A stretch of DNA of 64,000 nucleotides from Lepidodermella squamata (lineage: Eukaryota; Animalia; Gastrotricha): assembly GCA_047495785.1 (NCBI GenBank), contig JBLDXI010000055.1, forward strand, positions 1,860,001 through 1,924,000. Reading direction: 5' to 3'. Shown piece by piece: positions 2,527 to 6,076 of the stretch. Below the pieces are notes generated by a model. It saw nothing but the letters and a program-made list of their open reading frames with translations, was not told the DNA's origin and did not search any database. The first letter of the stretch is position 1. Every line of letters begins with the position of its first letter. Made by a program: the position numbers and the translations under genes.

Positions 2527-5500
2527 TTAGAGCAGGATAAAACTAGCATTAGCGGCGTCAGATGTTTGTGAAAGCAAAAAATTTCGCATCAAGGTTTTCA
2601 AGTCCTTTCGCTCGTCCATGTTATCGACAAGACGCACTCGTTTCGCATCGAGAAAATTCCAGTCGAACACTATCCATTTCACGGAACACAACGACAAGCT
2701 GCGAAAAATAATAAGTAATGTCGAATAGAGATAGATAATAGATGGCATTAACGTCTTTACCTGCCAGCCTGAATAAGCTGATGAATGCGAAGTGGTGTGC
2801 CGATACCGTCAAACGGGGCGACTTTGACAGTGGGGCGACATTGACATGGGTTTTTGCGATCGACTTTAACCGCGATGATGTGGGACATGAAAGCAAAATT
2901 TAGGTATCAATATGGGTATATTTGGAAAGCTGAGAAAAAGTTGAACAAAATGGAGGGGTGTAGCGAACGCAATAAAATTTAGGTTGATTGGAAAATCAGG
3001 TAGAAGGTGGCCAAAGTCACCCGCACACACGTATGATGCTTTTGGGGCGACTTTGCCCTAGTTTGATGAAAAATCAAAAAACCACGAAAATAAAGGAAAA
3101 CTGCAACAGTTTTGTTGCAAAAATAAAGTTAAAATGCGATAAAATACTACAAAAATATAAAATAATGATAATATTGATTAATAAAAATACAACTGATTTG
3201 TTTTGACACTTATTGTTTACCGGGAAATATATCACGTGCTTCTGTTCAGGTTCAGGGAACGAGAACGGGGATCTAGAAAATAACTAGAACGTTTTTGTTT
3301 CCATTCATCAGAAAATCAAGTCAATTTTGTGGACCGTGGACCCTCCAAATTATTTGTAACATCCATCATTCATCCTTCATCATTCATCATTCATCGACTC
3401 ATGGATATTTACTAAATGCAATACCTGACTTTTCAACTAAATGTTGGTTGCTAACATTATGCTTTTTTCCTCCTAGACTTCTTTAAAAGGTTTCTTATTC
3501 TCTTTATCAATTATATTATCTCGCAATGGTTCGCAATTATGAGCGCGAAGCAGGCAGCCGCCAGTACCGGGACTACTCTCCTTCAACGTTGCGTGAGGCG
3601 GTTTCAGATGTTCGACAGGGTGCTAAGTCTGTAAGGCAATCTAGTCGCGACTCAGATATCTGCCGGGGGACCGTTAAGAACAAGGCGAGTAATTTACACA
3701 TGAAAAAAGCTGGGGGCCAGCGGGCGTTAAGTGAAACTCAGGAAAACATTTGCTGTGATTATTTAGTCAAGTTTGCGAACCATGGGTTCCCCCTGGATGA
3801 GCTAAGGGTTAGGAGTTTGGTTCGTTCTTATTTGATAGAGCGTGGCATCACCGTTAAGTGTTTTCGTGAGGGGAATATGCCTGGGAGAGACTGGTACTAC
3901 TCGTTCATTAAGCGTAATCGAGATCGCGTTAGGCAGAAAATAGGGACTAATTTGAACGTTAAAAGGGCTTACAGCCGAAATGGTGCTAAAAGCGAAGGCG
4001 GACGCAGAAGCTGCAAGACTAGCTGTTAAAGAAGCTGCGAAGTCGAAAGCAAAGTCTAAAGCTAAGCTGCGGAAAACTATCATCATCAACCCAGCTTTAG
4101 ATTCACGCGGTGCCTTTGATTGTAAGCTTAATACTTTACAATTGTTAAAATTTTGACGATTTTTTTTCCGTAGACTTCAACGATGTCATGGACGAAAGTT
4201 TCCCGGTCGATTTTATTGATGCACGGTCTGATTTGATTGAGAAACAAGCCGCCGAAGCTCAAGCTATCGCTGAGAAACAAGCCGCCGAAGCTCAAGCTAT
4301 CGCTGAGAAACAAGCCGCCCGAGCTGAAGCTATCGCTCAGGAAAAACTCGCTCTCGAATCTCGTTTGCACAAAGTCCAGTTGTGGTGCAAAGATGTAAGC
4401 GGCCGCGGTGATTGTTTCTATGAGTCTTTATGTGACCAAATCCATGGTTTCGCTCCTCCCGCCTTAATTAAGCAACTCCGAGTTGATACTGCGGCCTTTT
4501 TGTCGGCAAACATTGAGGCATTTTCTGCATTCGTAAACCTCAAGCCAAATGGCGAAGATACCCAGGCGATGGCGGACGTTGAAGAGCCCATTGACGTTCA
4601 AGGTAAGCTTTTCTTCGGTGTGATTATAGATTTTAATTAATGCTGTTTAGTTGCTGCTCAGCGAGAAGAAGGAATTTGGGCGGATGAAAAGAGTCTCATA
4701 GCCGCCGCCCGTGCTCACAACGTCATCATATATGTGCACTGCTCAAACTACTCAAGATGCTACGAGCCTAGTATTATCAACCATGAAACTTTAACTGCTC
4801 ATGTTGCTTATTATACCACTCACTACATGTCGATTAGGGACATTTTTCATAAATCTAACGAGTATAGGAAACTAAATTTAAGTGTTGACGGAAATGTCTT
4901 ATCACGCACATAGACTAGACTTATATATCTATTTTTGTACCTAAGTAACTGTGATAGTTATAGCATGCTTCTATACGTTAGCTGAAATTGAGATGATGTC
5001 GGTATTATCCCGTGATAATGATGCTCTACCTTGAAATACATCGGTTCTAAAAATCACTAAAGTCTTTCGATTTCAGCTTCAATTTTTATGATTATTCTAC
5101 AAAATAAAATGATATTTGTTTCATTTTGCGTTGACTTTCTCCTTTTTTCGCGATTAAAACAAAACGACGTAACCCGATAAAATGCCGGCGGAATAGCGGA
5201 AAGTTGTCGAAGTAAAATTGGTCATTTTTATGAATAATGCTGTTCCCGAATCTACACAATCATTCAAGAAAACACACTGTAATAAACTTAAGGTAGACTA
5301 GCGCCGTAGTTATAATAAATAATTTCAAATTTTTAGGCACAATTCATTTCAAAATTTTAATAAACGTCAAGGTCATTTGGTTGTTTTTCTGTCAGGAGAT
5401 CATGGTAAAGCCGCCCCCATCGAGCTGTGTCAAAGTCGCCCCAGCGTCAAAGTCGCCCCGTTTGACGGTACCAATATGTACGATGTTTTTCTTTAAGAAT

Positions 5501-6076
5501 TCTTTCTGATGCTCAATCTGTAACACGAAATGCTGAATGCCACTGGTATGGAAAGTTAAAACAAACTTTCATGTGCCGGGAGAAAAGTTTGGCGACCTTG
5601 CAGTTTTTCCCTTTAAAAGGTGTCAACAAACTAAAGATGATAGGGCCAAATGTTATCGAGTCGGTTCAAAAAACGTTGCACAGGAAAGCTACCGAATTAA
5701 ATTGCAGCAACGAATTGCAGAACTGCAAACAACAAGCATGAGTGGTTCCCCCTTATGTTTAGCATCGGCTAACGAAGCTTGCCAATCCGGAAGACAAGCT
5801 TTCAGGTACACTGACGGATCGGCTGACTCCCGAGCACTTGAAGGCGGCTGAATGAACCGTTCACCTGTTAAATGGTCGCTGATACTCATTGTCATATTCA
5901 CATGGAAATGATTTACGAGGAACAATTAGCTCAGATAATTCCAAGCTGGTCAAGTCGTCCTTGAACAGGTTATTGATCGAATCATTTAGATGCAGCAGAC
6001 TGTGCTGAATTTCATGCTGCCTGCTTTTCGGTTTGCTAGATTTGCTCTTGGTGCTGACATCAAGTATAGGTTCCAT
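2527..6076 (-). CDS. CMSS1: CMS1/CMSS1 ribosome-biogenesis protein, 5 exons, exon 4 interrupted by a DNA transposon
   Basis: Manual splice 6076-5917, 5864-5693, 5630-5567, 5517-(insertion)-2761, 2698-2527 gives ...GEPLMLVVCSSAIRCCNLIR..CKVAKLFSRHMKIEHQKEFL..VHIG|IGTPLRI..WIVFDWNFLDAKRVRLVD, matching CMS1-family motifs. Confidence 0.85.
3526..3970 (+). pseudogene. pogo/Tigger-type transposase N-terminus (HTH_psq + CENP-B-type HTH); DDE domain absent
   Basis: MVRNYER..YSPSTLREAVSDVRQGAKSVRQSSRDSDICRGTVKNK (psq-like HTH), then GGQRALSETQE..ANHGFPL..PGRDWYYSFIKRN (CENP-B-like HTH), ending ...NVKRA. No DDE region follows. Confidence 0.8.
3980..4913 (+). CDS. Transposon-borne coiled-coil + OTU cysteine protease domain (exons 3980-4121, 4174-4602, 4651-4913); may be the C-terminal part of the original transposase
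   Basis: Two GT-AG introns (4122-4173, 4603-4650) splice in frame. Motifs: DVSGRGDCFYESL (Cys box), LRVDTAAFL, GIWADEKSLIAAARAHNVIIYV and HVAYYTTHYMSI (His box). The start codon is uncertain. Confidence 0.78.
4239..4337 (+). repeat. 33-bp coding tandem repeat x3 (EKQAAEAQAIA)
   Basis: GAGAAACAAGCCGCCGAAGCTCAAGCTATCGCT twice exactly, plus one slightly diverged copy. Confidence 0.95.

What the first reader, a model, noticed from the sequence alone, without database searches (positions are those of the whole stretch)
3526..4913. pogo-like transposon encoding a spliced OTU deubiquitinase-like domain
Seen: between the TIRs, two in-frame introns assemble a complete OTU-type domain with a Cys box (GRGDCF), a central GxW motif and a His box (THYMS), downstream of a K/A/E-rich coiled coil. 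Known: I recall OTU domains from Helitron/Helentron and Ginger elements, whereas pogo transposases more typically end in a coiled coil with or without a PHD finger. Inference: the autonomous parent may encode a transposase-OTU fusion (psq-HTH-DDE-coil-OTU). Such a protein could remove ubiquitin from itself or from chromatin to counter host silencing. I do not recognise this as a described pogo architecture.
Basis: partly seen in the sequence, partly recalled or inferred. Interest (0 to 1): 0.88.

Follow-up and report, generated by a model that had tools for sequence, protein, structure and literature searches.

The report
Pogo transposon carrying an OTU protease
This is a broken but still transcribed copy of a cut-and-paste jumping gene whose intact relatives fuse their DNA-cutting enzyme to a ubiquitin-removing (OTU) protease taken from an ordinary animal gene, a pairing described for other jumping-gene families but, as far as I could find, not for this one.

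Summary

**The element.** Window 2806-5468 is a 2.66-kb pogo-type DNA transposon with an internal deletion. It has 23-bp perfect TIRs and a TA target duplication.
- It keeps the transposase N-terminal HTH ORF (3526-4029).
- In another reading frame it keeps a linker/coiled coil plus an OTU domain (3980-4913).
- RNA contigs of a public run remove both predicted GT-AG introns (4122-4173, 4603-4650) exactly.
- The spliced product scores 80 bits against a profile of 77 OTUD3-type domains. Catalytic Cys (4413-4415) and His (4821-4823) are in place.

**Relatives.**
- Three intact or nearly intact pogo elements in the same genome splice a DDE_1 transposase ORF onto OTU exons.
- Two degraded copies related to the window's carry the DDE_1 tail and the OTU Cys box in one ORF.
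- A contig from another organism has the same layout.

**Origin.** The two OTU introns of the three full-length copies (the window copy keeps one) sit at the same positions and phases as in the host OTUD3-like gene and in octopus OTUD3. The module was therefore probably captured as genomic DNA from an OTUD3-type gene.

**Status.**
- The insertion looks hemizygous, so it is probably recent.
- Deubiquitinase activity is untested.
- OTU domains are published for Ginger1 and Helitrons. I found no pogo report.
- This scan already noted pogo-OTU elements elsewhere in this genome (s1-391705, s1-429988, s1-387801).

The parts
2804..2805 (.). TA target-site duplication, left
   Evidence: The empty-site joint 2803>5469 leaves a single TA.
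2806..2868 (+). Left terminal inverted repeat: the first 23 bp are perfect and the arm holds GGGGCGAC(T/A)TTGAC subrepeats
   Evidence: (I1, I5, D3, D4). The arm family occurs in at least 40 places in the genome.
3526..4029 (+). ORF of 167 aa: the N-terminal HTH DNA-binding part of a pogo transposase. The DDE_1 domain is missing and the deletion junction lies near 3970-3980.
   Evidence: It is 33-37% identical to residues 1-148 of three full-length DDE_1 transposases, E about 1e-20. Pfam gives no significant hit on its own. RNA contigs cover 3533-4121 without a splice.
3980..4121 (+). Exon 1 of the linker/OTU ORF (internal ATG, K/A-rich), in a different frame from the HTH ORF
4122..4173 (+). 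Intron 1 (52 nt, GT..AG, phase 1), in the linker upstream of the OTU domain
   Evidence: RNA joint 4121>4174 in X1, absent from DNA run X2.
4174..4602 (+). Exon 2: coiled coil (33-nt unit three times, 4238-4351) and the N-terminal half of the OTU domain, with Cys loop GRGDCF (Cys codon 4413-4415)
   Evidence: This exon alone scores 31 bits against the OTUD3-type profile.
4603..4650 (+). Intron 2 (48 nt, GT..AG, phase 1), at the same position and phase as an intron of OTUD3 genes
   Evidence: RNA joint in X1. Intron mapping.
4651..4913 (+). Exon 3: the C-terminal half of the OTU domain (GIW 4671-4679, His loop THYMS with His codon 4821-4823) and the stop codon
   Evidence: This exon alone scores 43 bits.
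5406..5468 (-). Right terminal inverted repeat
5469..5470 (.). TA target-site duplication, right

Best explanation
**What is shown.**
- Window 2806-5468 is a non-autonomous, internally deleted copy of a pogo-type (IS630/Tc1/mariner group, DDE_1) cut-and-paste transposon.
- It has lost the catalytic DDE domain.
- It keeps the transposase's N-terminal HTH part.
- Out of frame behind it, it keeps the C-terminal module of the ancestral protein: a linker/coiled coil plus an OTU cysteine-protease domain.
- This copy is transcribed from the + strand, and both its introns are removed.
- Full-length relatives encode HTH, DDE_1, linker and OTU as one spliced protein.

**What is inferred, strongly.** The OTU module came from an animal OTUD3-type gene and was captured as genomic DNA. 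The intron inside the window copy's OTU domain, and both OTU introns of the three full-length copies, keep the position and phase of OTUD3 introns.

**Mechanism (inferred, about 50%).** The OTU domain is an active deubiquitinase that the transposase carries in cis. It would strip ubiquitin either from the transposase itself, stabilising it, or from chromatin or repair factors at the excision and insertion site, steering repair. This benefits the element, so selection on the element has kept the domain.

**This copy.** Here the OTU ORF is only a downstream, overlapping ORF on the transcript. The copy probably contributes little protein and depends on a transposase supplied in trans.
For: **Transposon identity.**
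- TIRs and TA duplication.
- HTH ORF homologous to full-length DDE_1 transposases.

**OTU identity.**
- 80 bits against 77 OTUD3-type domains, versus 7.5 bits or less for 2000 shuffles.
- PDB OTUD3 is the best hit for both halves, with Cys and His aligned.

**Splicing and expression.** RNA joints fall exactly at both introns.

**The fusion in relatives.**
- L050, L051 and L052.
- L056 and L057 hold DDE_1 and OTU in one ORF.
- Foreign contigs L073 and L070 have the same layout.

**These are mobile elements, not host genes.**
- The ends of the C15 element occur in at least 40 MITE-like copies of about 1.04 kb.
- The window insertion has an empty allele in DNA run X2: depth 43.5 against 49.3 for the element and 81-85 for the flanks.

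**Selection on the OTU domain.** C15 versus C3 has saturated synonymous sites (pS 0.7-0.9). Non-synonymous pN is 0.31 in OTU, 0.37 in HTH, 0.20 in DDE and 0.58 in the linker.

**Origin.** Intron positions and phases are identical in the pogo OTU, the host OTUD3-like gene and octopus OTUD3.
Against: - No enzymatic evidence exists.
- The acidic third residue two places after the catalytic His in OTUD3 (HYD) is M, Y or F in the transposon versions.
- Pfam OTU stays below its cut-off on single exons.
- The splice from the transposase ORF to the OTU exons in the intact copies is predicted, not seen in RNA. Run X1 holds only 27% of that element's words, and no further read-laying run was available.
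- None of the 120 closest database transposases has an OTU domain, so the domain is not needed for pogo transposition in general.
- On a tree the transposon OTUs sit on long branches outside the animal OTUD3 group, so the donor is unresolved.
- The DNA empty-site contig has only 26 letters on its shorter side.
Confidence: 0.82

Rival explanations
1. The OTU part is a fragment of a host gene picked up by this one copy only (a transduplication like a Pack-TE) and has nothing to do with the transposon family.
For: DNA transposons do capture host fragments. The module is OTUD3-like and still has OTUD3 introns.
Against: - At least nine other copies, of two deeply diverged types, carry the OTU at the same place after the transposase. 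These include three full-length elements and contigs from other organisms.
- The module is only about 30-39% identical to the host OTUD3-like gene.
- pN shows long-term constraint within elements.
Confidence: 0.03
2. The OTU-bearing 'transposases' are domesticated host genes, and the window copy is a pseudogene of one of them.
For: The internal part of each full-length copy is single-copy in the assembly. pogo transposases are often domesticated (PMC7386202).
Against: - The copies have TIRs.
- The C15 element's own ends bound a family of at least 40 MITE-like copies.
- There are several decayed copies.
- The window insertion is flanked by TA, lies inside a host exon and has an empty allele.
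Confidence: 0.04
3. The OTU domain works as a processing protease rather than a deubiquitinase. It would cut the fusion protein, or a ubiquitin-like modifier conjugate, as the OTU-like proteases of some RNA viruses process polyproteins.
For: - Viral OTU proteases combine both roles; nairovirus OTUs appear among the PDB hits.
- A long, poorly conserved linker separates DDE and OTU (pN 0.58).
Against: - The nearest relatives are cellular OTUD3 deubiquitinases.
- No conserved cleavage motif was noticed in the linker, but I did not search for one systematically.
Confidence: 0.08
4. The OTU domain no longer cuts anything. It serves as a ubiquitin- or E2-binding module, and in this window copy it is not made at all.
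For: - The acidic residue after the catalytic His is missing in all transposon versions.
- OTUB1 is a published example of an OTU protein with a non-catalytic role (titles and abstracts listed).
- In the window the OTU ORF starts at an internal ATG, 454 nt after the first ATG, in another frame and overlapping the upstream ORF.
Against: - Cys and His, and the W, D, HY and S positions, are invariant across deeply diverged copies.
- A non-catalytic binder would not need the Cys, yet it is lost only in an obviously decayed copy (L056, Cys to Arg).
Confidence: 0.2

Closest known systems
Ginger1 DNA transposons with a C-terminal OTU (or Ulp1) domain on the transposase (Bao, Kapitonov and Jurka 2010, PMC2836005)
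   Same: A cut-and-paste DNA transposon whose transposase carries a C-terminal OTU cysteine-protease domain and whose coding sequence is interrupted by a few introns. The role is proposed to lie in ubiquitin pathways during transposition.
   Different: The Ginger1 enzyme is a Gypsy-integrase-like DDE with YPYY, zinc-finger and GPY/F motifs. Here it is a pogo DDE_1 transposase with HTH domains and a TA duplication. No OTUD3 intron conservation was reported there.
Helitron/Helentron elements encoding an OTU-like protease (PMC6431247, PMC2836005)
   Same: An OTU domain carried by a mobile element as an accessory module.
   Different: They transpose by a rolling circle with a Rep-helicase protein, and they have no TIRs or TA duplication.
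pogo superfamily transposons (Tigger, pogoR, Passer, Fot and others; PMC7386202, PMC7325037)
   Same: - N-terminal HTH/psq DNA-binding region.
- DDE_1 catalytic domain (PF03184).
- TIRs and a TA duplication.
- MITE derivatives.
- The closest database proteins are 37-45% identical arthropod and mollusc pogo-like proteins.
   Different: Described members end after the DDE and C-terminal region. Neither survey mentions an OTU, ubiquitin or protease module. None of the 120 closest database homologues has one.
OTUD3, a cellular OTU deubiquitinase (PDB 4bou)
   Same: - It is the best structural-database match for both halves of the domain.
- The Cys loop and His loop align.
- Two intron positions and phases are shared with the host and octopus OTUD3 genes.
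   Different: - About 30-39% identity.
- No C-terminal extension beyond about 45 residues after the His loop.
- The HYD motif is replaced by HY(M/Y/F).
- It sits on a long branch outside the animal OTUD3 group.
- It is fused to, or lies behind, a transposase.

Membership tests
pogo (DDE_1) DNA transposons | Terminal inverted repeats and a TA target-site duplication | tested here: met
   Perfect 23-bp TIRs at 2806 and 5468, with TA on both sides. The empty site has a single TA.
pogo (DDE_1) DNA transposons | N-terminal HTH (psq/CENP-B type) DNA-binding region homologous to pogo transposases | tested here: met
   ORF 3526-3978 matches residues 1-148 of three DDE_1 transposases at E 7e-21 to 5e-20. 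Database relatives of those transposases carry PF05225 and PF03184. Pfam alone is not significant on the window ORF.
pogo (DDE_1) DNA transposons | DDE_1 catalytic domain (PF03184) | tested here: not met
   It is absent from the window copy through internal deletion. It is present in relatives: L050 64 bits, L051 62 bits, L056 50 bits. The copy is therefore a non-autonomous member.
OTU cysteine proteases (PF02338 / clan CA) | Significant sequence match to the OTU domain over its whole length | tested here: met
   - The spliced product scores 80.2 bits over profile positions 5-156 of 77 OTUD3-type domains; shuffles score 7.5 bits or less.
- The half-domain profiles hit OTUD3 in the PDB at E 4e-12 and 5e-7.
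- Pfam's own model is below cut-off on single exons and reaches 22.3 of 23.3 bits on relative L057.
- The spliced protein could not be handed to Pfam.
OTU cysteine proteases (PF02338 / clan CA) | Catalytic Cys in the Cys loop and catalytic His in the His loop | tested here: met
   Cys (codon 4413-4415) aligns with the C of GDGNCLF in OTUD3. His (4821-4823) aligns with the H of EHYDSV.
OTU cysteine proteases (PF02338 / clan CA) | Third, acidic or amide triad residue positioned to orient the His | tested here: inconclusive
   The position two places after the His is M in the window and Y or F in the other copies, instead of D. Some OTUs supply this residue from elsewhere. No 3D model could be made, because spliced sequences cannot be submitted.
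OTU cysteine proteases (PF02338 / clan CA) | Deubiquitinase activity | not testable with these tools
   This needs Ub-AMC or di-ubiquitin assays.
OTUD3 orthologues | Groups with animal OTUD3 on a tree and has the OTUD3 domain layout (OTU plus a C-terminal tail or UBA region) | tested here: not met
   The transposon OTUs lie on long branches outside the animal OTUD3 group, which does contain the host OTUD3-like gene. The ORFs end 30-45 residues after the His loop. The module is derived from the OTUD3 type, as the shared introns show, but it is not an orthologue.
Ginger1 / Helentron OTU-bearing elements | Gypsy-type integrase (Ginger1) or Rep-helicase (Helentron) as the mobility enzyme | tested here: not met
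   The mobility enzyme of the relatives is DDE_1. No integrase or Rep/helicase was found in the elements examined.

The most novel reading that the evidence does not exclude
A still-active lineage of pogo transposons carries its own ubiquitin toolkit, consisting of an OTUD3-derived deubiquitinase fused to the transposase and, in the full-length elements, a separate small HIRAN protein that binds DNA 3' ends. Together they would rewire ubiquitin-dependent DNA-damage signalling, such as PCNA or histone ubiquitin marks, at the transposon's own break sites. Other readers' unchecked notes report OTU domains in several unrelated transposon superfamilies of this genome. If so, this would be a host-specific arms race around ubiquitin-based transposon control.
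Probability: 0.2. Interest if true: 0.8.

Novelty: new variant of a known kind. Interest (0 to 1): 0.6.

Why it matters
Transposases that carry a ubiquitin or SUMO protease are known (OTU or Ulp1 in Ginger1, OTU in Helitrons, Ulp1 in MULEs). What the protease does for the element has never been settled.

A pogo version would add an independent case of a mobile element acquiring this kind of protease, in the best-understood and experimentally most tractable transposase superfamily. Its origin is traceable to OTUD3, because introns are retained. It has intact copies, MITE derivatives, expression and a probably recent insertion.

That makes the question testable. One can compare excision, integration, transposase stability and ubiquitin marks with and without the catalytic Cys.

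It is also a practical warning for annotation. The domain is split by short introns and is missed by Pfam on single exons, so such fusions are probably under-reported.

Tried and rejected
- **Pfam on single exons of the window and of L050.** No OTU hit above threshold. The spliced protein could not be given to Pfam or to the structure tools, because only unaltered references are allowed. There is therefore no Pfam score for the whole domain and no 3D model. I used a local profile instead.
- **Single-sequence PDB search with window exon 3.** The best hits were chance haemagglutinin matches, and OTUD3 reached only E 0.32. The family profile was needed.
- **HIRAN remnant in the window copy.** None found by tblastn (best E about 1).
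- **DNA similarity between the window element and the C15 element.** None.
- **L002**, the fragment 83% identical to 3971-4221. It is a short relic with no DDE upstream.
- **Tree of OTU domains.** It does not resolve the donor. The branches are long and the join with P0188 is suspect.
- **Closest 120 database transposases.** None has an OTU domain or a '..DG' ORF end.
- **Organism.** Not identified; names are coded or absent.
- **RNA support for the transposase-to-OTU splice of the intact C15 element.** X1 holds 27% of that element's words.
- **Adaptor-like loose end.** A 24-letter loose end abuts 3526 in X1. I could not use it to place the transcript's 5' end.
- The stretch laid was 3,101 letters.
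Full report
**What is in the window**

The stretch lies in eukaryotic DNA with introns of about 50 nt. The window is 44% G+C, and the assembly is 121 Mb in 151 contigs.
- Inverted arms at 2804-2868 and 5406-5470 resolve, on reading the ends, into perfect 23-bp TIRs at 2806 and 5468. Each is flanked by TA. That is the signature of the Tc1/mariner/pogo group.
- The arm sequence recurs at 40 or more places in the genome.
- The first ORF inside the element (3526-4029, 167 aa) is 33-37% identical to the first 148 residues of three long ORFs elsewhere in the genome. Those ORFs carry the DDE_1 domain, PF03184, at 62-64 bits. Their closest database relatives are arthropod and mollusc pogo-like proteins with PF05225 plus PF03184.
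- The window copy has no DDE domain, so it is an internal-deletion derivative. The deletion junction lies near 3970-3980.

**The spliced OTU reading frame**

Joining 3980-4121, 4174-4602 and 4651-4913 gives 834 nt with no stop. Both gaps are GT..AG.

I laid two public runs on 2600-5700.
- Run X1 is RNA. It removes two CT..AC introns of the host gene on the minus strand (2699-2760 and 5518-5566).
- X1 also contains contigs with joints 4121>4174 and 4602>4651. These are exactly the two predicted introns, and the listed X1 pieces have no mismatches.
- DNA run X2 lacks these joints.
- X1 covers about 3533-4937 and reads straight through 3845-4121. The transcript therefore carries the HTH ORF followed, in another frame, by the OTU ORF. 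In this copy the two are not fused.

**Is it an OTU domain?**

- Pfam does not reach threshold on single exons.
- A profile of the exon-3 pieces of six copies (A1) finds human OTUD3 (PDB 4bou, residues 76-152) at E 4e-12. OTUD5 is next.
- A profile of the exon-2 pieces (A2) finds OTUD3 residues 9-70, including the GDGNCLF Cys loop, at E 5e-7. It is followed by OTUD5, OTUD1, nairovirus OTUs and yeast Otu1.
- A profile built only from 77 database OTUD3-type domains scores the window's spliced product at 80.2 bits in a single stretch (residues 105-270). The two exons alone score 31 and 43 bits, and 2000 shuffles score 7.5 bits or less.
- The catalytic Cys (codon 4413-4415) and His (4821-4823) align with those of OTUD3.
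- The Asp two residues after the His in OTUD3 is Met here, and Tyr or Phe in the other copies. Catalytic competence is therefore likely but not certain.

**The predicted parent exists**

- In L050 (contig C15) a 633-aa transposase ORF ends at '..NVPADG' on a GT donor. After 54 nt an exon continues 'GCQFHAL..'. After a second intron a third exon carries '..TWGDNDTLVAFAR..' and '..SDHYYSV..'. The predicted product is 786 aa: HTH, DDE_1, linker and OTU.
- L051 (C3, 781 aa) and L052 (C4, frameshifted in the transposase) have the same structure.
- Two decayed copies related to the window's (41-45% identical in the OTU exons) hold the end of DDE_1 and the coil or Cys box in one ORF. These are L056 5501-6202 (DDE_1 50 bits) and L057 4505-4873 (OTU 22.3 bits plus DDE_1).
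- Further relics retain the OTU end behind the HTH end (L055, L058).

**These are transposons, not host genes**

- The internal part of the C15 element (L050 3165-7584, 4,420 bp, TIRs found) is single-copy. Its terminal 410 and 310 bp bound at least 40 MITE-like copies of about 1.04 kb, at 81-89% identity.
- Between C15 and C3 the synonymous sites are saturated (pS 0.7-0.9). Non-synonymous divergence is 0.31 in the OTU region, 0.37 in HTH, 0.20 in DDE and 0.58 in the linker. The OTU domain has thus been conserved about as well as the DNA-binding domain.

**Beyond this genome**

- A search of 1.84 billion representative proteins with A1 gave 275 hits.
- Most are OTUD3-type proteins, for example octopus and ascidian OTUD3.
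- The best hits are ORFs of about 100 aa from unspliced gene calls on short contigs of other data sets.
- L073 (SRR19603261) carries the tail of a pogo transposase (44% identical to C15 residues 316-409, E 7e-24). A linker follows, then an OTU exon 32% identical to the window's exon 2 (E 6e-15), then exon 3.
- L070 (SRR21620664) has '..EVAGDG', an intron, 'DCQFHAM..', an intron, then exon 3. The intron positions and phases are the same as in the C15 type.
- None of the 120 closest database transposases has an OTU domain. The fusion therefore marks a particular lineage, not pogo in general.

**Origin of the module**

- The host's own OTUD3-like gene (L065; Pfam OTU 33-34 bits) has a phase-2 intron in the Gly codon of 'GDG|NCLF'. 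It also has a phase-1 intron eight codons before the aromatic residue of 'TFAGND'.
- In an alignment of spliced products both introns fall in the same columns and phases as in C15, C3 and C4. The second also matches the window's intron 2.
- Octopus OTUD3 (L072) has the same two introns: gg|a before NCLF, and t|tg before 'YNLKKPGTYAGND'.
- These are therefore old OTUD3 introns. The simplest reading is that a pogo element captured OTUD3 exons as genomic DNA.
- The window's type and L073 lack the Cys-loop intron and have a linker intron instead.
- A tree does not place the transposon OTUs next to the host gene, and they sit on long branches. The capture is thus old, or the sequences evolved fast, and the donor is unknown.

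**State of this copy**

- X1 (RNA) and X2 (DNA) both hold the joined form 2803>5469, which leaves one TA.
- In X2 its depth is 43.5, against 49.3 for the left junction and interior and 81-85 for the flanks. The right-hand contig's depth of 96 is explained by the high-copy TIR words it includes.
- The insertion is therefore most likely hemizygous or polymorphic, and hence recent.
- The joined form is an empty allele, not a splicing product.
- The element interrupts an exon of a minus-strand host gene. Another reader called it CMSS1; I did not check the name.

**Function**

Steps shown:
- transposon identity;
- OTU fold family, with Cys and His in place;
- splicing;
- the fusion in relatives (predicted from sequence, not yet seen in RNA);
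- constraint on the domain.

Steps inferred:
- The domain is an active deubiquitinase working for the element (about 50%).
- Its target is the transposase itself, or ubiquitin marks at the break site.

The full-length elements also carry a small upstream gene with a HIRAN-like exon: L050 6783-6409, 105 aa predicted, Pfam HIRAN 17.5 bits on exon 1 and below cut-off. This hints at a link to DNA-end handling. The window copy has no trace of it.

**Comparison with what is known**

- OTU domains on transposases are published for Ginger1, and OTU-like proteases for Helitrons/Helentrons (PMC2836005, PMC6431247).
- Two surveys of pogo diversity do not mention OTU, ubiquitin or protease (PMC7386202; PMC7325037).
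- Six further searches found no pogo or Tc1/mariner OTU report.
- Repbase and Dfam could not be consulted.
- Other first-stage notes of this scan describe pogo-OTU elements, with HIRAN, elsewhere in this genome. They also describe OTU domains in other transposon superfamilies. I treated these as leads. My own checks on L050-L052 agree with the pogo ones.

**Verdict**

It is a new variant of a known theme, and of moderate to high interest.

Noticed in passing
window 2761-2803 and 5471-5517 (minus strand): The element splits an exon of a minus-strand host gene.
- RNA run X1 holds the uninterrupted exon (joint 2803>5469) with the neighbouring introns 2699-2760 and 5518-5566 removed.
- DNA run X2 also holds the empty site at about half the flank depth.
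- The joined form is therefore an empty allele, and the element is not spliced out.
   Followed up: partly
L050 6783-6640 and 6582-6409 (minus strand); L052 6520-6726: Full-length pogo-OTU elements carry a small two-exon gene (105 aa predicted) upstream of the transposase, in the same orientation. It has a HIRAN-like motif: Pfam HIRAN 17.5 and 14.2 bits on the first exon, below cut-off. The window copy has no trace of it.
   Followed up: partly
L050 3165-7584 versus genome (for example G000:C17:726970-728012): The 410-bp 5' end and 310-bp 3' end of the single-copy C15 element bound at least 40 MITE-like copies of about 1.04 kb, at 81-89% identity.
   Followed up: partly
window 4238-4351: The coiled-coil region contains a 33-nt (11-aa) unit repeated three times. 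Two units are identical, which suggests a recent tandem duplication within this copy.
   Followed up: no
L034 1468-3207 (minus strand); G000 places listed: - L034 holds a 579-aa ORF with an AT-hook that ends in an OTU Cys-box half ('..VVGDGSCLFHAL..').
- Several other PF02338 matches in this genome lie in long open frames (625, 801 and 628 aa).
- OTU domains may therefore sit in other mobile elements here, as other readers' notes say.
   Followed up: no
L056 7699-8139 and 8049-8585 (minus strand): A Tc1-like transposase remnant ('..DDNAPIH..SPDLNPIENVW..') lies next to the decayed pogo-OTU copy on contig C59.
   Followed up: no
P0188 (905 aa, residues 266-407): An unnamed long coiled-coil protein from public assemblies has an OTU domain (Pfam 55.7 bits) with the transposon-like motifs NCQFHA and NHYYSL. 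It joins the transposon OTUs on the tree, but the long branches make that join unreliable.
   Followed up: no
window 3526: In X1 a 24-letter loose end abuts the ATG at 3526. By my recollection it is the reverse complement of a SMART cDNA-synthesis oligo. I could not derive the transcript's 5' end from it.
   Followed up: no
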